Shown here piece after piece: positions 4,621-64,000 of a DNA stretch of 64,000 bases; the stretch's first letter is position 1; every line of letters begins with the position of its first letter. The notes beneath the pieces were generated by a model that ran no database searches, was not told the DNA's origin, and saw nothing but the letters and a program-made list of their open reading frames with translations. This stretch comes from Octopus sinensis. Its lineage: Eukaryota. The stretch covers positions 48,360,001 through 48,424,000 of the forward strand of contig NC_043001.1 in NCBI RefSeq assembly GCF_006345805.1, read 5' to 3'. The position numbers and the translations under genes are program-made.

Positions 4621-4988
4621 GTTGCGGTAACTGCTGAAGTTATGTACTGCAATTGTTGCTGCTGTTGTTTCTGATGCAGTTGTGTACGCTGCCGTTGCTT
4701 GTATTGCAGCTACCTTCAAATTCTTCTGTCGCTGCATCTGCTAATGTTGCAGCAACTGCTGACGTTGCAGCAACTGTTATTGCTACCGTGAATGTTGATG
4801 CTGTTGTTTCTGTTGCTAACTGCTGCTACTGCTGCTGCTGCTGCTACTGTAATTGTTGTTGTTGTTGTTGTTGTTGTTGGTGGTGTGGTGGTGGTGGTGG
4901 TGGTGGCATTGTTGCTATTATTACAGTAATTGTCGACGGCGAATGATTGGTAGAATTGGTAGAGTGTCCGAATAGCTTGATAAATTTA

Positions 4989-6626
4989 CCTTCAGGTATT
5001 CTATCCAGCTCTTTCTGTTCTGAGTTCAAATTCTGTCCAGGTTAACGAGATCGATAAAATAAAGTACAAGCCAAATATTGAGTCGATATAATCGAGGAAC
5101 TCGCCCATTCCCCCAGATTTTAGACCCAGTACATATTATCACCTTCAGGTATTCCATCCAGCTCTTTCTGTTCTGAGTTCAAATTTTCTCCAGGTTAACG
5201 AGATCGATAAAATAAAGTACCAGGCAAATATTGAGTCGACATAATCGAGGAACTCGCCCATTTCCCCAGATTTTAGACCCAGTACATATTATTACCTTCA
5301 GGTATTCTATCCAGCTCTTTCTGTTCTGAGTTCAAATTTTCTCCAGGTTAACGAGATCGATAAAATAAAGTATCAGGCAAATATTGAGTCGATATGATCG
5401 AGGAACTCGCCCATTTCCCCAGATTTTAGACCCAGTACATATTATCACCTTCAGGTATTCCATCCAGCTCTTTCTGTTCTGAGTTCAAATTTTCTCCAGG
5501 TTAACGAAATCGATAAAATAAAGTACCAGCCAAATATTGAGTCAATATAATCGAGGAACTCGCCTATAGCCCCAGACTTTAGACCCAGTACATATTATTA
5601 CCTTCAGGTAATCCATCCAGCTCTTTCTGTTCTGAGTTCAAATTCTGTCCAGGTTAACGAAATCGATAAAATAAAGTACCAGGCAAATATTGAGTCGACA
5701 TAATCGAGGAACTCGCCTATAGCCCCAGACTTTAGATCCGGTACATATTATTACCTTCAGGTAATCCATCCAGCTCTTTCTGTTCTGAGTTCAAATTCTG
5801 TCCAGGTTAAAGAGATCGATAAAATAAAGTACCAGCCAAATATTGAGTCGATATATTCGAGGAACTCATCCATTCCCCCAGATTTTAGACCCAGTACATA
5901 TTATTACCTTCAGGTAATCCATCCAGCTCTTTCTGTTCTGAGTTCAAATTCTGTCCAGGTTAATGAAATCGATAAAATAAAGTACCAGGCACATATTGAG
6001 TCGACATAATCGAGGAACTCGCCTATAGCCCCAGACTTTAGATCCGGTACATATTATTACCTTCAGGTAATCCATCCAGCTCTTTCTGTTCTGAGTTCAA
6101 ATTCTGTCCAGGTTAAAGAGATCGATAAAATAAAGTACCAGCCAAATATTGAGTCGATATATTCGAGGAACTCATCCATTCCCCCAGATTTTAGACCCAG
6201 TACATATTATTACCTTCAGGTAATCCATCCAGCTCTTTCTGTTCTGAGTTCAAATTCTGTCCAGGTTAACGAAATCGATAAAATAAAGTACCAGGCAAAT
6301 ATTGAGTCGACATAATCGAGGAACTCGCCTATAGCCCCAGACTTTAGATCCGGTACATATTATTACCTTCAGGTAATCCATCCAGCTCTTTCTGTTCTGA
6401 GTTCAAATTCTGTCCAGGTTAACGAAATCGATAAAATAAAGTACCAGGCAAATATTGAGTCGACATAATCGAGGAACTCGCCTATAGCCCCAAACTTTAG
6501 ATCCGGTACATATTATTACCTTCAGGTAATCCATCCAGCTCTTCCTGTTCTGAGTTCAAATTCTGTCCAGGTTATAATCGAGGAACTCGCCCATTCCCCC
6601 AGACTTTAGATCCGGTATATATTATG
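4989..6626 (+). repeat. Tandem satellite with a 153-bp unit: 10 full units plus one internally deleted unit, SINE-derived
   Basis: CCTTCAGGT recurs at 4989, 5142, 5295, 5448, 5601, 5754, 5907, 6060, 6213, 6366 and 6519 (exact 153 spacing). The unit contains the SINE1 B-box-like TTCTGAGTTCAAATT and the GATAAAATAAAGTACCAG…GTCGA…ATCGA core. Confidence 0.95.
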
Positions 6627-6842
6627 AATGACAGCGGATTGGGAAAAATCGTTGGCACATCAAAGAAAATGCTTTGCAGTATTTCCTGTGATTCTTTCAT
6701 TTCTGAATTTAAATCCTGCCAATTTTAACTTTGCATTCCATCCTTTGGGGATTAACAAAACAAAACAGAAGTCAAAGTATTGGGGTTTAGGAAATCGATT
6801 ATTCTTCCACATCCCAAATTACTAGCATTATTATCTCAATTA

Positions 6843-7255
6843 AAGGCGGCAAACTGGCAAAATCGCTAACACGCTGGACGAAATGCTTAGTGGTATTTTA
6901 CCCGTCGCTGTGTTCATGAGTTCAAATTCCCCCGAGATCAACTTTGCTTTCCATCATTTTGGGGTCGATTAAATAAGTACCAGTTACGCACTGGGGTCAA
7001 TATAATCAACTTAATCCGTTCGTCTGTCCTTGTTTGTCCTCTCTGTATTTAGCCACTTGTGGGTAGTAAAAAAAAAAGGTATTTTACCCGTCGCTGTTCA
7101 TGAGTTCAAATTCTCCCGAGATCAACTTTGCTTTTCATCCTTTCGGGGTCGATAAATTAAGTACCAGTCGAGTACTGGGGTCGATGTGATCGACGACGCC
7201 CCGCCCCCTCCCCACAAATTGCAGGCTGTGTACCTATAGTAGAAAGGATTATTAT
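6843..7255 (+). mobile_element. tRNA-derived SINE1a with a SINE1b tail module nested at its GGTATTT site
   Basis: Head AAGGCGGCAAACTGGCAAAATCG (A-box-like) and GAGTTCAAATTC (B-box). The 1b tail …GTGGGTAGTAAAAAAAAAA is followed by GGTATTTT at 7078. The 1a tail is …CTATAGTAGAAAGGATTATTAT. Confidence 0.85.
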
Positions 7256-7265
7256 CTGAATTAGA

Positions 7266-7476
7266 AAGGCGGCAAGCTGGCAGAATCGTGACCACAGCTT
7301 GCGAAATGCTTAGCGGCATTTCGTCCGTCTATACGTCTTGAGTTCAAATTCCGTCGAGGTCGACTTTCATCCTTTCGGATCGATAAAATAAGTACCAGTT
7401 CAGTACTGAGGTCGATGTAATCGACTTAATCCCTTCCCGCAAATTTCAGGCCGTGTATCTACAGCAGAAAGGATTA
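7266..7476 (+). mobile_element. tRNA-derived SINE1a, tandem to the previous copy
   Basis: AAGGCGGCAAGCTGGCAGAATCG…GAGTTCAAATTCC…CTGAGGTCGATGTAATCGAC…AGAAAGGATTA. Confidence 0.85.
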
Positions 7477-7991
7477 GTTTCTGAATTAAAGATAGTTTGT
7501 TTTCTTTCACGTACTATTCGATAGCAGTAGATTGGCTAAAAAAATCTTTAGATCGTTTAACAAAATACCTTCAAGGGTTTCTTCTGGTTCTTCATGTTCT
7601 GATTTCAAATACCACGAAGACGAATTCGGTTTTGGAACCTCTGAGGGTAATAAAATGAAGTACCTATAGAAGAAACGATTATTTGGTTGTTTCTTTAACC
7701 CCAGGTCAACGCTGAACAATGTGTTTTAAGGTCTGAAGCACTCTCGGCATCAGGATGATATGTATATATATATATATGTGTGTGTGTGTGTAATATATAT
7801 ATATATATATATATGTAATATATATATACATATATACTTTATATATATATATTATATATATATATATAATATATATATATATTATAAAGAGAGTACAGTA
7901 TGAATGGGAGACAACTTGACTATTATTTCTACTGTGTCTAGTGACCGCGCATGATTCTCTGGTACCGCTGCTGCTGCTGTTGTTGTTGCCC

Positions 7992-10203: not shown

Positions 10204-10403
10204 TAGGGAAGTATGCAACCTAGTCCGATAGTTCCTTCAATAACGACGTTGAGGGCGACAATAACAATCATTAGTAACGATGTGTACGGCGTTCGTGATG
10301 ATGGTATGAAGTTGTTGATAACGAGGAGGAGGGGGGGAGGAGGAGGAGAGCGACGACGCCGACGACGATAATAATGATGACGTAGATGGTATTGAGGAGG
10401 AAA

Positions 10404-10595
10404 TGCTTAGCGGTATTTCGTCTGCCGTTACGTTGTGGGTTCAAATTCCGCCGAGGTCGACTTTGCCTTTCATCCTTTCGGGGTCGATAAATTAAGTACC
10501 AGTTACGCACTGGGGTCGATGTAATCGACTTAATACCTATGTCTGTCCTTGTTTGTCCCCTCTGTGTTTAGCCCCTTGTGGGTAATAAAGAAAAA
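10404..10595 (+). mobile_element. SINE1b (Tx1-type tail), 5'-truncated, with 16-bp target-site duplication
   Basis: TSD GGTATTGAGGAGGAAA at 10388-10403 and 10596-10611. Tail GTCTGTCCTTGTTTGTCCCCTCTGTGTTTAGCCCCTTGTGGGTAATAAAGAAAAA. Confidence 0.92.
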
Positions 10596-11409
10596 GGTAT
10601 TGAGGAGGAAAAGGTTGGTGGTGATCTTAGTAATCGTGGGGTGGGGTCGTTGTGATGGTCTTGGGGATAGTGGTGGTGGTGGTTGTGGTGATATTTGCTG
10701 AGGAGACAAAGGCGTTAACAATTCCTATTTTCTGTGAATATTGACGTTTCATCGGTACATTTTCATTACATCTGTCAAGAAAAAATAAAATTATTGATTT
10801 TCACTTTAGCTGTGACACACTATATGACTCCAGTTAAAGTGACTGCTACTTATTGAGGATGCTGTGGCAACTATGCTGCGACACAAAATAAAAAAGTGAT
10901 TGCAAGGATAGTTTAATGAGAGAAGGTGTTAAAAATAAACTGTGTCAGAATGAAAACAAAAAAACTGAATATAGGCTCTGTTAGCTCGATAAATCCACTG
11001 CGATTGAGAAGTGTCAAACTGCAAGGACAAACGTGGCTTCCATGAGCTTCATTGACGCCATTCCTCATTGGTTGACATATGTATAGTTCCGCGGTTTTAG
11101 CAGAAGAGAGATGAAAAGATTGATTTCACGTATCTACTACCGCCAAAAAATACAATGAAAACACAGTCGGCAGCGTACATCATCACACAAACTCACACAA
11201 ATACACAGACGCATACGCACAAATACAAACACACACACACACACACACACACAACATATATATATATATTATATAATATATATTATATATTATGCATTCA
11301 TACACATAGTGTATGTATTTATGTGTGTGTATGTGTGTGCGTGTGTGTGTGTGTGATGTGTGTATGTGTGTGTGAGTGTGTGTGTGTGCGTGTGTGTGTG
11401 TGTTTATGA

Positions 11410-27509: not shown

Positions 27510-27724
27510 AATCGTGGTGCAGGTATTTCCTCCGGTTCCCAACGTTTTGAGTTGAAATTCCACCAATGTCGACATTGTCTATTATCCTTTCGGAGTCGAT
27601 AAAATAAGTACCTGGTAAGTGATAAAATATCAGGCCTTTTTTCCTGTCGAAGAAATGATTGTTATTATTATTATTATCATTATTATTATTATTATTATTA
27701 TTATAATAATAATAATAATACTAC

Positions 27725-27760
<36 letters not shown>

Positions 27761-27855
27761 CAAGAACAACAACAATAATAATAACAACAAGAACAACAAC
27801 AATAATAATAATAACAACATCAACAACAACAATAATAATAATAACAATAATAATA
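27510..27855 (+). mobile_element. Diverged SINE1a fragment with long (ATT)n/(AAT)n tail
   Basis: GGTATTTCC…GAGTTGAAATTCC…GTCGATAAAATAAGTACC, then trinucleotide repeats. Confidence 0.65.
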
Positions 27856-28084
27856 AAGTGAGCTGGCAGAATTGTTAGCACGCTGGACGAAATGCTTAGC
27901 GGTATTTCGCCCATCGCTACGTTCTGAGTTTAAATTCCTCCGCGGTCGACTTTGTCTTTCATCCTTTCGGAGTCGAGATATTAAGTACCAGTTGATCACT
28001 GAGGTTGATGTAATCGACTAGTCCCCTCCCTTCAAATTTCAGGTCTTGTGCCTATAGTAGAAATGATTATTATTGTTATTATTA

Positions 28085-28117
<33 letters not shown>

Positions 28118-28148
28118 CATCATCATTATCATCATTATTATTATTATT
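27856..28148 (+). mobile_element. SINE1a with (ATT)n tail
   Basis: GTGAGCTGGCAGAATTGTTAGCAC…CAGGTCTTGTGCCTATAGTAGAAATGATTATT…. Confidence 0.88.
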
Positions 28149-30165
28149 TTCATATACACCCAACGGATTACACTGTTGGAAAAGAAACAATCCTAACCTC
28201 GGGCTACAACAAGTAACCTTAGGTGTCAAGAATTCTCCTATCGGACTACAATAAGTAACTTTATATACCAAGTACCCTCCTAAGTATCCTCGCTGCCCCT
28301 AATAACACTATTCGCTTGAGCAGTACTAAACTGAGTTTTATGCCTATTTCCTCTATCCATCTGTTCAAATTTTTAGGGATAGATCCCAATGGACCTATAA
28401 CTACTGGTGTACATTTTACCCGCACTTTCCATAATCTCTGTAGTTCAATAGCTAGGTCCTGGTACTTTGCTATTTTTTCTATACTTCGCATATTTATGTT
28501 TTCATCATTTGGGACTGTAAATTCAATTATCTGCACCTCCTATTCTCTTTATCTACTACTAGCAAATTACGCTTTCTAGCTTCTATTACTGTGTCAGTCT
28601 GAATGTTTAAGTCTCACAACATCTTATATCTCTTACTTTCTAGTAGTTTACTATGTTCATGTTCATACCATTTATCAGTATGTTCAAATTCTAGCTTTCT
28701 ACATAGCTCCCAGTGGATTGCTGTCCCTAGATTGTCATATATTTTCTTGTATTCTTTCTATGCCAGCATGCTATATTCACTTACTATATGAGTAGCGCTT
28801 TCCTCTTTTGATTTGCATAATTTACATTGGGAATGTACTTGGTTTTTGACTGTCTTGGCTTTTATGCAATTAGTCCTTATTGCTTAATCTTGTGCAACTA
28901 CTAACAAACTTTCTGTCTCCCTCTTCAGTTTTCCTTTCTGCAACCATAACAATGTTTCACTACTACTATTTGCTGCAACTAGTTTTGGAAATCTACCATG
29001 CAAAGCCAGTCAAATAATTGATGCTCTTTTTGCTGGTTTTTAAATTCGTTTTGGCTTTTGGCCTCCCTATGTCTTCCTGTGACTCTAGTAGCTTTTAATA
29101 AACTTTCTTCATAGAAGTCTATATTTACTCCAGGTAATTCTCCGCAATCTTCTACTGATATTAAACCTCTTCCGCTATCTTTTGTAGGTAGGTATAATCT
29201 TGCTACTCCTGCCCTTGGGCGGAGTCCTACATTCATATTGAATTCCTTCCCTAGCTTTTCTCTCTAGCATCGCTAATTCAGTTTTTGTCTAATCTACAAA
29301 AGCTGCTGTGTATCTAAATAACGATACTTCCCAAGTATTTACAGCCTTCACTAGATTCGGACCATTTAGCTTTGATTTCATTAGCTTTCTTACCCTTGTG
29401 ATGTACTCCTTGTCAAATTTCGTTTTCATTTCTGTTGTTAGCACCCTGTCAGATTCTAATACTCCTAAATACGTAAAACTCTCTCTTTTTAATGATTTTA
29501 ACGTCTGACCATCTGGTGATTACATGCCTTCGCTGTTGACTACCTGTCCCCTTCTCATGACTAATACTGCACACTTATCAATACCAAATTCCATGCTGAA
29601 GAGTCTTACAGTCTGTATTAAAGAATTTATCTCTTTTTCATTCTTACTAAAAAGCAAATGGTTAATTTTTCCCTTACAATTTCTGAAATTATACTCTGCC
29701 TTTACCTTCCTTAATACTAAACTGGGGGTATCAAACATAACACAAATATTAAAGAAGACAACGAGACCCCCTGGAAAATTCCATTTTTCACATTAACATT
29801 CCCTAAAAGTCGTCACCTGAATAGAGATCTACTTTCTATTTCTTCATGCTGCAGCTAATTAATTCTCTTATGTTGTCTGCTATGCTGAATATACTCAAAT
29901 ACTCACTTATCTTGAGTGTGGGATCGTGTCTTTCGAATAATCTATCCATGCTATTGCTAGATTTTCCTTTTCTAGCTTTTTCTTAATTTAGAACTGCTTT
30001 GTCTATGTATAATAGATCATGCGTTCCTCTATCCTTTCTCTTGCAAGCTTTCTGTTCTTCTGGCAGTAAATCCTGGTTGTCAAGGTGCTCGTAAATGTTT
30101 CCACACTAATGGTAAGTGATTGGTCTGTAGTTGCTAACTCTATTATAATATACAACTAGCAACTA
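28149..30165 (-). mobile_element. R4/Dong-clade non-LTR retrotransposon C (RT remnant plus RLE endonuclease), decayed, 5'-truncated
   Basis: GKINHLLF…MEFGIDKCAVL, LYLPTKDSGRGLISVEDC, IIEFTVPNDENI…KIAKYQDLAIEL…VVIGPLGSIP…LLGAARILRRVL*. The 3' UTR runs into (AAT)n. Confidence 0.85.
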
Positions 30166-39349: not shown

Positions 39350-39449
39350 NNNNNNNNNNNNNNNNNNNNNNNNNNNNNNNNNNNNNNNNNNNNNNNNNNN
39401 NNNNNNNNNNNNNNNNNNNNNNNNNNNNNNNNNNNNNNNNNNNNNNNNN
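39350..39449. other. Assembly gap (100 N)
   Basis: Run of N; the round number suggests a placeholder of unknown true size. Confidence 1.
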
Positions 39450-60084: not shown

Positions 60085-60458
60085 GGAGGCATCAGTAATA
60101 AGCTGATTAGATGGACCCCAGTACTCAACTGGTACTAAACTTATCGATTCCAAAAGGATATAAGTCATGGTCGATCGCCGTGGAATTTGAACTCAGAACA
60201 TAAAGACAGACGAAATACCTATTTCTTTACTACCCACAAGGGGCTAAACACAGAGAGGACAAACAAGGACAGACAAACGGATTAAGTCGATTACATCGAC
60301 CCGAAGTGCGTAACTGGTACTTATTTAATCGACCCCGAAAGGATGAAAGGTAAAGTCGACCTCGACGGAATTTGAACTCAGAACGAAGCGGCAGACGAAA
60401 TACCGCTAAGCACTTTCGAAATACCGCTAAGCTAACGTTTTTGCCATCTCGCCGCCTT
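60085..60458 (-). mobile_element. SINE1a host with nested SINE1b (60220-60416), 9-bp TSD
   Basis: TSD CGAAATACC (GGTATTTCG on the element strand) at 60211-60219 and 60417-60425. Confidence 0.9.
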
Positions 60459-62850: not shown

Positions 62851-62989
62851 TATGTTTCTTGCAGATATTATCTCCCAGGTAATCACCCCCACCAAACACA
62901 CATCCGTGAACATAATTTGTCCTGAACGGACGTCTCAACCAGACTAATGTATATTTCATCGCTGTAAAATTTCGTTGGTTTCAAGTACC

Positions 62990-63172
62990 TATTTCTTTAT
63001 TACCCACAAGGGGCTAAACACAGAGGGGACAAACAAGGACAGACATAGGTATTAAGTCGATTACATCGACCCCAGTGCGTAACTGGTACTTAATATATCT
63101 ACCCCGAAAGGATGAAAGGCAAAATCGACCTCGGCGGAATTTGAACTCACAACGTAACGCAGACGAAATACG
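62990..63172 (-). mobile_element. SINE1b body, interrupted at its GTATTTCG site by a Tx1-like LINE
   Basis: The reverse complement reads GTATTTCGTCTGCGTTACGTTGTGAGTTCAAATTCCGCC…GGGTAATAAAGAAATA, followed by GGTACTT. Confidence 0.9.
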
Positions 63173-63173
63173 A

Positions 63174-64000
63174 ATTTCTTTATTGCCCACCGGGGGCCAA
63201 ACATAGATATGGACAGTACAACTGATGGGATCAGTGAATCGATATGATTTTACATAAATGTGACATCAAAAATAAAATACAATACATAAAAATCGAATGG
63301 AATACACAGTACAAAAACAAAAGAAATGAAGCGATGATCAAGTTACGCTCCGATCCCACAAGCCCCGATCTACCGCTGATACCTTTTTATTTTCTCTTTT
63401 TTTTTTCCTCGTATATTTTCACACGGTTCCTTGCACGCACAACACTCGTGCAACATACTTCCATCTCTTTTGGAACGTACACTCTGACAGACACCTCTTC
63501 TCCAGCCACAGTTTCCTTTTCAAATGAAAAGAAAAAAAGGATCGTAAATTGTCACCAGAGATAAAGTTGCCTGTCTTAATTCCTTATATCCTAGTATTCC
63601 ATACAGCCTCTTTTGCTATTGCTACAACCGTGAGAAAACAATTCTTACCTTCGTTCGTTAGAACTCCCGGTGGGTCAATTTTTATAATTGACTCAGTCGA
63701 CAGCCGTACTCTTCCTTCGCCGGACAACAGATGTTCAGCATAAGCCCACATTTCAGTTATCTCCGGACACTGAACAATAGCGTGAGGGACGGTTTCCCTG
63801 TCCCCACCGCATCTTGGACAGGTCGGCGACTGACGTTTACCATGTCTTGCGAGCTTATCCCAAACGGGCAAGGCACCTCTGTAGCATTGCCAGGTTAAGG
63901 ACTTTTGGAAGTTGTCCAACGTTCTCAACCCGAATGTACGATGAAACAAGCTGTCCAGTTGAATAAATCCGAGACCTAGAGTCGACCCCAGGCCATCGTC
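63174..64000 (-). mobile_element. Tx1/L1-type non-LTR retrotransposon, 3' end (ORF2 C-terminal zinc-finger region and 3' UTR); continues beyond the window
   Basis: SLTWQCYRGALPV…CPRCGGDRETVPHAIVQCP…W…AKEAVWNTR matches the L1/Tx1 C-terminal CCHC region. The U-rich 3' UTR ends GGTGGGCAATAAAGAAAT. Confidence 0.82.

What the first reader, a model, noticed from the sequence alone, without database searches (positions are those of the whole stretch)
62984..64000. Candidate LINE/SINE partnership: a Tx1-like LINE shares its 3' terminus with SINE1b
Seen: the LINE 3' end (63207 to 63174, minus) is TCTATGTTTGGCCCCCGGTGGGCAATAAAGAAAT. The SINE1b tail is TCTGTGTTTAGCCCCTTGTGGGTAATAAAGAAAT, 29/34 identical. 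SINE1a has the same body but a different tail (…CTATAGTAGAAAGG(ATT)n). Established: SINEs commonly borrow the 3' end of the LINE that mobilises them, and Tx1-clade LINEs include many target-specific families. Inference: SINE1b is a chimera of a SINE1 body and the tail of this Tx1 family, and it is mobilised by that LINE's ORF2. This would be a self-contained, possibly undescribed target-specific LINE/SINE system.
Basis: partly seen in the sequence, partly recalled or inferred. Interest (0 to 1): 0.85.

Follow-up and report, generated by a model that had tools for sequence, protein, structure and literature searches.

The report
Octopus SINE borrows Tx1-like LINE tail
An abundant short repeat (SINE) in this octopus genome ends in the same roughly 45-base hairpin-containing tail as a Tx1-type LINE retrotransposon found across octopods, so the LINE's enzyme most likely copies the SINE; this is a good new example of a well-known kind of parasitism, not a new kind.

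Summary
The LINE 3' end (63207..63174, minus) and the SINE1b tail are 29/34 identical. The tail is the true 3' terminus of the LINE. Seven independent LINE copies end in it: the window copy, Octopus sinensis, two Argonauta hians subfamilies, two read-assembly copies and one metagenome contig. In Argonauta, several unrelated SINE families carry the same tail, and one has copied about 235 nt of the LINE 3'UTR.

Full-length Argonauta relatives encode APE + RT + zf-RVT. Their RT is closer to Xenopus Tx1 (229 bits) than to human L1 (147 bits).

The tail can fold into a conserved stem-loop, with only one covarying pair.

New here: the window LINE abuts a 5'-truncated SINE1b at the SINE's internal GGTATT. 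Two other SINE1b copies sit at that same position in other SINEs. All three readable SINE1b TSDs begin with GGTATT. Argonauta SINE TSDs begin with TATT, and two LINE copies lie in (ATT)n. This is a site preference, not strict specificity.

The window LINE copy is defective (in-frame stop) and is cut by the window end.

Verdict: the core partnership is supported. It is a new member of a known kind. Repbase and Dfam could not be checked.

The parts
63419..64000 (-). C-terminal end of the ORF2 of a Tx1-like LINE, cut by the window edge. It carries an in-frame premature TAA at 63586..63584. The frame then continues for 54 codons to TGA at 63421..63419.
   Evidence: Pfam zf-RVT E=5e-9. 55-63% identity to cephalopod LINE ORF2 C-termini. 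The frame-0 translation past the stop aligns with the relatives' C-terminus.
63174..63418 (-). LINE 3'UTR (245 nt), ending in the conserved tail.
   Evidence: Aligns at about 70% with the O. sinensis copy L004 through to the tail in a single HSP. MAFFT alignment of four 3'UTRs.
63174..63222 (-). Conserved LINE 3' block of about 49 nt. The predicted stem-loop pairs TCTATGTTT with AATAAAGA around the hairpin GCCC-CCGGT-GGGC, and the block ends in GAAAT.
   Evidence: Alignments A1 and A2. Fold. Pair counts: 88% of cells paired against 40-51% when slid, with one GC<->CG covarying pair.
62991..63173 (-). SINE1b copy D. It is 5'-truncated at consensus position ~51, exactly at the SINE's internal (G)GTATTTCG, where the LINE tail abuts it. 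Its own tail is 63024..62991. It is followed by A + GGTACT (62990..62984).
   Evidence: 97% identical to copy A. Junction read.
10404..10595 (+). SINE1b copy A, 5'-truncated at about consensus position 38. It is flanked by a perfect 16-bp TSD, GGTATTGAGGAGGAAA, at 10388-10403 and 10596-10611.
60220..60416 (-). SINE1b copy B, inserted inside another SINE at its GGTATTTCG site. The TSD GGTATTTCG lies at 60425..60417 and 60219..60211.
6892..7098 (+). SINE1b copy C: the 3' part of SINE1b nested in a SINE1a at the same GGTATT position. The duplicated host sequence starts with GGTATTTTACCCGTCGCTG at 6892 and 7078. The tail, with a degenerate A-run, ends at 7077.

Best explanation
The window comes from an octopod genome. 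On the minus strand, 64000..63174 is the 3' end of a defective copy of a Tx1-like LINE (APE-RT-CCHC type).

This LINE family ends in a conserved block of about 45-50 nt: TCTRTGTTT, then a 4-bp hairpin with a 5-nt loop, then AATAAAGAAAT. There is no poly(A).

SINE1b is a Pol III-type SINE. It consists of the common octopus SINE1 body (positions 1-168) fused to this LINE 3' module.

Inferred mechanism: the LINE's ORF2 protein recognises the stem-loop tail on its own RNA and starts target-primed reverse transcription there. SINE1b RNA presents the same tail and is copied in trans. This produces 9-17-bp target-site duplications and frequent 5' truncation.

Integration prefers sites whose top strand begins TATT. 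For SINE1b the site is GGTATT; for SINE1a and some LINE copies it is (ATT)n. Because every SINE1 body contains GCGGTATTTCG, new SINE1b copies, and here the LINE itself, often land inside older SINEs at that exact position.

Shown: the shared tail, its terminal position in many LINE copies across three or more species, Tx1 affinity, the TSDs and the site bias. Inferred: recognition of the tail by ORF2p, trans-mobilisation, and whether the endonuclease or RNA/target annealing sets the site.
For: Tail and terminus:
- The two tails are 29/34 identical, E=1.7e-5.
- The tail is at the 3' terminus of LINE copies in the window, O. sinensis L004, A. hians L005 and L006 (two subfamilies, about 55% aa identity), Logan contigs L010/L011 and L012, and JGI contig L013.
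- In Argonauta, several SINE families with different heads carry the same tail.
- One Argonauta SINE directly behind the L006 LINE matches its 3'UTR at 77% over 124 nt, plus the tail.

Structure of the tail:
- The stem-loop is predicted identically for LINE and SINE tails.
- 88% of cells are paired against at most 51% when slid. Pair 17-27 switches GC<->CG.

Tx1 affinity:
- Architecture is Exo_endo_phos + RVT_1 + zf-RVT.
- Xenopus Tx1 ORF2 is a named hit at E=3.5e-64.
- RT-region scores: Argonauta-Tx1 229 bits, Argonauta-L1 147, Tx1-L1 145-149.
- In the ML tree Tx1 is sister to the Argonauta LINE clade (86/90), with human L1 outside.

Target sites:
- 3/3 readable SINE1b TSDs start with GGTATT and the fourth flank is GGTACT. 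GGTATT occurs at 3.6e-4 per oriented position in the window.
- The LINE tail abuts a SINE at the same internal site.
- Argonauta SINE TSDs of 14-17 bp start with TATT or TATAT.
- The L005 LINE has the TSD (ATT)4ATAC. The L013 LINE is followed by C(ATT)n with n>=28.
Against: - No functional test was done.
- The window LINE copy has a premature stop, and its 5' end and upstream TSD lie outside the window. Insertion of the LINE into the SINE is therefore inferred from geometry alone.
- The window LINE tail differs from SINE1b's at 5/34 positions, two of them in the loop.
- LINE 3' flanks are heterogeneous: TGGATGTT inside a satellite in L004, TCACAACC in L012, CCAATTTT in L010.
- Only four SINE1b copies were available, and none is demonstrably full length.
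- The hairpin rests on a single covarying pair, and folding z-scores are not significant.
- Tx1 placement uses only two labelled references (Xenopus Tx1 and human L1). It reaches the window copy only through 55-58% identity over 138 aa plus the shared 3' end.
Confidence: 0.8

Rival explanations
1. The 'LINE tail' at 63207..63174 is a separately inserted fragment of SINE1b, or a chance match, and is not part of the LINE.
For: It is immediately adjacent to a SINE1b copy, and nested SINE insertions are common in this window.
Against: The window LINE aligns continuously through ORF, 3'UTR and tail to O. sinensis L004. Six other LINE copies from other species end in the same block at the same distance from the stop codon. 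Blast E=1.7e-5.
Confidence: 0.02
2. The tail is shared, but SINE1b is driven by a different, currently active sister subfamily of the Tx1-like LINE. The family represented by the window copy is only a relative.
For: There are 5/34 differences, including two loop positions. The Logan LINE copy L012 has the SINE1b-type GGGTAATAAAGAA stem side, and O. sinensis L004 has the SINE1b loop CTTGT. PMC13282606 reports 13 recently active L1-Tx1 families in O. vulgaris.
Against: The window LINE shares the C-G state of pair 17-27 with SINE1b. It also sits in a SINE at the SINE1b-type target site.
Confidence: 0.35
3. The LINE-SINE junction in the window is not a LINE insertion into a SINE. It is a single chimeric retrotransposition event: the RT started on SINE1b RNA and then switched template to LINE RNA at the GGTATT microhomology.
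For: The junction falls exactly at GTATT. Read-through LINE or SINE RNAs would carry GGUAUU downstream of the tail, which would favour switching (inference).
Against: Copies B and C show ordinary TSD-flanked insertions at the same SINE position, so simple insertion suffices. No 5' junction is available to decide between the two.
Confidence: 0.12
4. The direction is reversed: the LINE family captured its 3' end from a SINE.
For: None specific. It is formally possible for a recent subfamily.
Against: The tail is conserved in LINEs of Octopus and Argonauta and in a metagenome-derived relative, whereas the SINE bodies and heads that carry it differ between genera.
Confidence: 0.03

Closest known systems
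'Common-tail' LINE/SINE pairs of the stringent type (Ohshima et al. 1996; eel UnaL2/UnaSINE1, Kajikawa & Okada 2002; reviewed in PMC3747384)
   Same: The SINE 3' end is homologous to the 3' terminus of a LINE. There is a conserved terminal stem-loop and no poly(A). Different SINE heads repeatedly capture the same LINE tail.
   Different: The LINE here belongs to the L1/Tx1 group, not to L2, CR1 or RTE. Recognition of the tail is untested.
SINEU / Tx1-Mar of crocodilians (Kojima 2015, PMC4494074)
   Same: A Tx1-clade LINE is partnered with SINEs. LINE and SINE share an insertion-site preference and are often found inside another repeat family, stacked next to each other.
   Different: In that case the partnership was inferred from a shared target (Mariner-N4_AMi) and shared snRNA-derived heads. 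Here it rests on a shared 3' tail. The heads are not snRNA-derived, and the site is a short motif (GGTATT / TATT / (ATT)n) that happens to occur in the SINE body.
Microsatellite-targeting Tx1-clade LINEs: Kibi (TC)n, Koshi (TTC)n, crocodilian (TTCC)n/(TTTC)n families (Kojima & Fujiwara 2004, as cited in PMC4494074)
   Same: The clade is the same, and some LINE and SINE copies sit in a trinucleotide repeat with the TSD made of the repeat (L005, L013, SINE1a).
   Different: The preference here is loose. Several LINE copies are not in (ATT)n. The (ATT)n preference rests on very few copies.
Monocot L1 lineage with a conserved 3' stem-loop shared with maize/sorghum SINEs (PMC3472496, PMC3747384)
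   Same: An L1-group LINE that keeps a structured 3' end mirrored in SINEs, i.e. stringent recognition within the L1 group.
   Different: That case is in plants and the L1 clade proper. Here it is molluscs and the Tx1 branch.
Octopus CORE-SINEs OR1/OR2 (Ohshima & Okada 1994; cited in PMC4824008 and PMC4758252)
   Same: An abundant octopus SINE with a Pol III-type head. RepeatMasker-based studies call the main octopus SINEs tRNA-Core/tRNA-Deu (PMC8967140).
   Different: Identity of SINE1 with OR1/OR2 was not tested because no reference sequences were on hand. No LINE partner for them was found in the papers searched.

Membership tests
LINE/SINE common-tail partnership | SINE 3' end homologous to the LINE 3' end | tested here: met
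   29/34 identical in the window. The homologous block extends to about 45-50 nt against other LINE copies.
LINE/SINE common-tail partnership | The shared sequence is the genuine 3' terminus of the LINE in independent copies | tested here: met
   Seven LINE copies from at least three species end in it.
LINE/SINE common-tail partnership | LINE and SINE insertions share TSD length and target features | tested here: inconclusive
   In Argonauta the LINE TSD is about 16 bp, (ATT)4ATAC, and SINE TSDs are 14-17 bp starting with TATT. In the window the LINE's 5' end is missing, and only its 3' junction (at the SINE's GTATT site) matches SINE1b. Other LINE flanks differ.
LINE/SINE common-tail partnership | Trans-mobilisation of the SINE by the LINE protein, dependent on the tail | not testable with these tools
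   Needs a retrotransposition assay.
Tx1 clade of non-LTR retrotransposons | ORF2 with an N-terminal APE endonuclease, an RT and a C-terminal CCHC (zf-RVT) motif | tested here: met
   The window copy shows only zf-RVT. The full-length Argonauta relative L005 has Exo_endo_phos + RVT_1 + zf-RVT. Distant full-length hits have the same domains.
Tx1 clade of non-LTR retrotransposons | RT groups with Tx1 references rather than with L1 or other clades | tested here: met
   Argonauta-Tx1 229 bits against Argonauta-L1 147 and Tx1-L1 145-149. R2 scores 71 bits. In the ML tree Xenopus Tx1 is sister to the Argonauta clade at 86/90. Caveats: only two labelled references were used, RTclass1 and Repbase were not available, and the link to the window copy is through 55-58% identity over 138 aa.
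Tx1 clade of non-LTR retrotransposons | Sequence-specific or strongly preferred target (true of many but not all members) | tested here: inconclusive
   SINE1b shows GGTATT in 3/3 TSDs. Two of eight LINE copies are in (ATT)n and one is at GTATT. The others are in unrelated sites.
tRNA-derived / CORE-SINE | tRNA-related head with A and B boxes | tested here: inconclusive
   A-box-like TGGCAGAATCG and B-box-like GAGTTCAAATTCC are visible in the sequence. However, ARAGORN and Rfam report no tRNA in the window.
tRNA-derived / CORE-SINE | Central CORE domain homologous to MIR/OR1 | not tested
   No reference CORE sequence was available. The resemblance is recalled from memory and suggested by the literature classification (PMC8967140, PMC4824008).

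The most novel reading that the evidence does not exclude
One ancient Tx1 lineage that recognises a stem-loop tail, present since the common ancestor of Octopus and Argonauta, may drive most octopod SINE families. These would include SINE1b, the (ATT)n-ended SINE1a (whose tail has the same hairpin plus A-rich layout) and several Argonauta SINEs. Site choice may be set partly by annealing of read-through RNA (…GAAAU-A-GGUAUU / …GAAAUCUAUU) to the nicked target. If so, SINEs would home into a motif inside other SINE copies and build stacked arrays. That would name the engine of the octopus-specific SINE expansion.
Probability: 0.3. Interest if true: 0.6.

Novelty: new member of a known kind. Interest (0 to 1): 0.42.

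Why it matters
SINEs make up roughly 12% of the O. vulgaris genome (PMC13282606) and about 40% of octopus repeat content (PMC8967140). Their expansion is regarded as octopus-specific. The papers I could search leave most of them 'unclassified' and name no LINE partner.

Tying an apparently young SINE subfamily (two copies 97% identical), and by tail architecture probably its relatives, to a Tx1-type LINE has three uses:
- It tells annotators how to classify these repeats.
- It points to which LINE activity to monitor in germline or brain.
- It offers a rare case of stringent, structured-tail recognition within the L1/Tx1 group, testable by hairpin mutagenesis.

It does not change the general picture of how SINEs parasitise LINEs.

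Tried and rejected
- Direct protein search with the 138-aa fragment found only two short Logan fragments. The length filter excludes full-length relatives. I bridged through the representative search and P0005.
- The metagenome-wide scan for the tail pattern gave two chance matches with no LINE or SINE context.
- Rfam (gathering threshold on the whole window; E-value threshold on one SINE) and ARAGORN found no tRNA. The tRNA origin of the SINE head is therefore unconfirmed here.
- Folding z-scores of the tails are not significant. I relied on pair counts instead, and these give only one covarying pair.
- I first considered that GGTATT (Octopus) or CTATT (Argonauta) after the tail might simply be the last bases of the element. 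I rejected this as the whole story for Octopus, because the upstream TSD copies also begin with GGTATT. In Argonauta the C, and sometimes CT or CTA, belongs to the element, and the TSD starts at TATT/TTTT.
- I considered that copies B and C might be members of one amplified dimeric SINE. I rejected this because the inserted part starts at different positions (about 34 against about 130) and the host sequences differ.
- The look-up of P0153 found no contig.
- A rooted quartet with R2 as outgroup could not be built, because the PDB tool prints only the five best alignments and all five are L1.

Full report
**What is in the window**

The sequence is eukaryotic and rich in one SINE superfamily. 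The nearest protein and DNA relatives of the LINE come from Octopus sinensis and Argonauta hians, so the window is from an octopod.

On the minus strand, 64000..63587 translates to 138 aa with a Cx2Cx8Hx4C motif that matches Pfam zf-RVT (E=5e-9). An in-frame TAA at 63586..63584 interrupts the frame. The frame then continues for 54 codons, homologous to the relatives' C-terminus, down to TGA at 63421..63419. This is therefore a defective copy whose 5' part lies beyond the window.

**The observation**

The SINE1b tail TCTGTGTTTAGCCCCTTGTGGGTAATAAAGAAAT occurs at 63024..62991 (-), 10561-10594 (+), 60254..60221 (-), and in degenerate form at about 7040-7077 (+). Identity to the LINE tail is 29/34, and blastn within the window gives E=1.7e-5.

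SINE1a and SINE1b share consensus positions 1-168 and then diverge. SINE1a ends in ...CCTTGTGCCTATAGTAGAAAGG followed by (ATT)n.

**Is the tail really the LINE's?**

Yes. The window LINE aligns in one HSP (822 columns, 70% identity) to an O. sinensis copy (L004). The HSP runs from the ORF through the 3'UTR to the last base of the tail.

Independent LINE copies end as follows:
- O. sinensis L004: ...TCTATGTTTGGGCCCTTGTGGCTAATAAAGAAAT
- A. hians L005: ...TCTATGTTTTTGCCCTTGTGGCTAATAAAAGAAAT
- A. hians L006, a second subfamily with about 55% aa identity: ...TCTGTGTCAGCCAGGTGGCTAAGAAAGAAAT
- Logan L012: ...TTTTATGTTTAACTCCTAGTGGGTAATAAAGAAT
- Logan L010/L011: a decayed version
- JGI contig L013: ...TGTTTCCGGGCCCTTGTGGCCAATAAAAGAAAT

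The rest of the 3'UTR is poorly conserved between genera, while the last 45-50 nt are conserved. That pattern argues for function.

In Argonauta at least two or three SINE families with different heads carry the same tail. A SINE directly behind the L006 LINE has copied about 235 nt of that LINE's 3'UTR: 77% identity over 124 nt, plus the tail. The LINE is therefore the donor, and SINEs have captured its end repeatedly.

**Structure of the tail**

RNAfold gives the same fold for the window LINE tail, SINE1b and the O. sinensis LINE. It is a 4-bp hairpin with a 5-nt loop (GCCC/CUUGU/GGGU and variants), extended by pairing of UCURUGUUU with AAUAAAGA.

On 28 tails, 88% of cells pair, against 40-51% when the 3' partners are slid. 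One pair switches G-C to C-G, and its neighbour takes G-U, G-C or A-U. L012 adds A-U and U-G variants, and L013 adds G-C.

Z-scores are not significant, and the covariation may reflect a single event. The stem-loop is plausible but not proven.

**Clade**

L005 holds a nearly full-length element:
- ORF1 with a CCHC knuckle
- ORF2 with Exo_endo_phos, RVT_1 and zf-RVT domains, broken by two frameshifts

Searching with its RT region returns Xenopus Tx1 ORF2 (YTX2_XENLA) at E=3.5e-64 and 36% identity. Human L1 ORF2p scores 145 bits and R2 71 bits.

Pairwise phmmer on the same RT region gives Argonauta-Tx1 229 bits, Argonauta-L1 147 and Tx1-L1 145-149. An ML tree puts Tx1 sister to the Argonauta LINE clade (86/90), with L1 outside.

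The window fragment is 55-58% identical to these elements over its 138 aa and shares their 3' end. 'Tx1-like' is supported, with thin reference sampling. Published octopus repeat annotations already list L1-Tx1 families, including 13 recently active ones in O. vulgaris (PMC13282606; PMC8967140).

The LINE tail is followed without any spacer by TCGTATTTCGTCTGC..., which is a SINE1b copy beginning at its internal GCGGTATTTCG.

The SINE1b copies sit as follows:
- Copy B lies in another SINE at the same position, with the TSD GGTATTTCG.
- Copy C lies in a SINE1a at the same position, and the duplicated host sequence starts with GGTATTTTACCCG.
- Copy A is outside any SINE but has a perfect 16-bp TSD, GGTATTGAGGAGGAAA.
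- Copy D is followed by GGTACT.

GGTATT occurs at 3.6e-4 per oriented position, so this is not chance. Only about 9 of the 46 GGTATT sites in the window are the SINE-internal site. Nesting in SINEs is therefore mostly explained by the motif being part of an abundant repeat, with perhaps some extra preference.

In Argonauta, SINE TSDs are 14-17 bp and begin TATT, TATAT or TTTT. The element contributes the C or CT of the recurrent 'CTATT'.

The L005 LINE has the TSD (ATT)4ATAC, and three short SINEs are stacked in its upstream TSD copy. The L013 LINE is followed by C(ATT)n with n>=28. SINE1a in the window has the TSD ATTATTATCTSAATTA, present three times.

Other LINE copies have unrelated flanks: L004 sits in a 31-bp satellite at TGGATGTT, L012 has TCACAACC and L010 has CCAATTTT.

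The system thus shows a preference for TATT, (ATT)n or GGTATT, not strict specificity. I cannot tell whether the endonuclease sets the site or whether read-through RNA anneals to the nicked target.

**Mechanism (inference)**

ORF2p binds the terminal stem-loop and starts TPRT at ...GAAAT. SINE1b RNA mimics that end.

Two SINE1b copies are 97% identical, which suggests recent activity.

The window LINE copy is dead, and its tail differs from SINE1b's at five positions. The real driver is the family or a sister subfamily.

**Comparison and novelty**

Common-tail LINE/SINE pairs are textbook. Structured 3' ends shared with SINEs exist in a monocot L1 lineage (PMC3472496). A Tx1/SINE partnership with a shared target inside another transposon is described in crocodilians (PMC4494074).

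In five literature searches I found no named partner for octopus SINEs. Repbase and Dfam could not be consulted.

I rate this a new member of a known kind. Interest is moderate, mainly because it may name the engine of the octopus SINE expansion.

Noticed in passing
window 4986-6574: A 153-bp tandem repeat with 10.4 copies at 93% identity. Its unit contains a piece of the SINE body (…TCTGAGTTCAAATTC…GATAAAATAAAGTACCAG…), so this is a satellite built from a SINE fragment.
   Followed up: no
window 6827-7488: The 16-bp sequence ATTATTATCTSAATTA occurs three times (6827, 7248, 7473). It brackets two SINE1a elements, the first of which has SINE1b nested in it. This looks like repeated insertion into the same (ATT)-type site, or a duplication of element plus TSD.
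   Followed up: partly
window 27703-28150: A SINE1a copy (27860-28066) lies between (ATA/AAT)n upstream (51 copies) and (ATT)n downstream. These are the same microsatellite in opposite orientations. This is unexplained.
   Followed up: no
window 63584-63586: In-frame premature TAA in the LINE ORF2. The frame stays open for 54 more homologous codons, so the copy is defective.
   Followed up: yes
L005 4886-5360 (Argonauta hians): Three copies of a short (~150 nt) SINE with a tRNA-like head and the LINE tail are stacked head-to-tail in the upstream TSD copy of a near full-length LINE. The whole block lies inside an (ATT)n microsatellite.
   Followed up: partly
L006 12014-12649 (Argonauta hians): The LINE 3'UTR ends in its tail at about 12290. 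It is followed within about 30-40 nt by a SINE whose body is a copy of that same 3'UTR (77% over 124 nt) behind a B-box-like head.
   Followed up: partly
L004 8700-9700 and 11070 onward (Octopus sinensis): The LINE copy is inserted in a 31-bp satellite (unit ~CCAGTCTCCAGATGTTCCATCACAGTTGTCA) that continues on both sides.
   Followed up: no
proteins P0153, P0005, P0151, P0152; loci L013, L014: Close relatives of this cephalopod-type LINE ORF2 are deposited as a 'Herbaspirillum sp.' MAG protein and as JGI metagenome contigs. They are most likely animal DNA in metagenomic bins, not bacterial genes.
   Followed up: no
window 39350-39449: A run of 100 N, i.e. an assembly gap.
   Followed up: no
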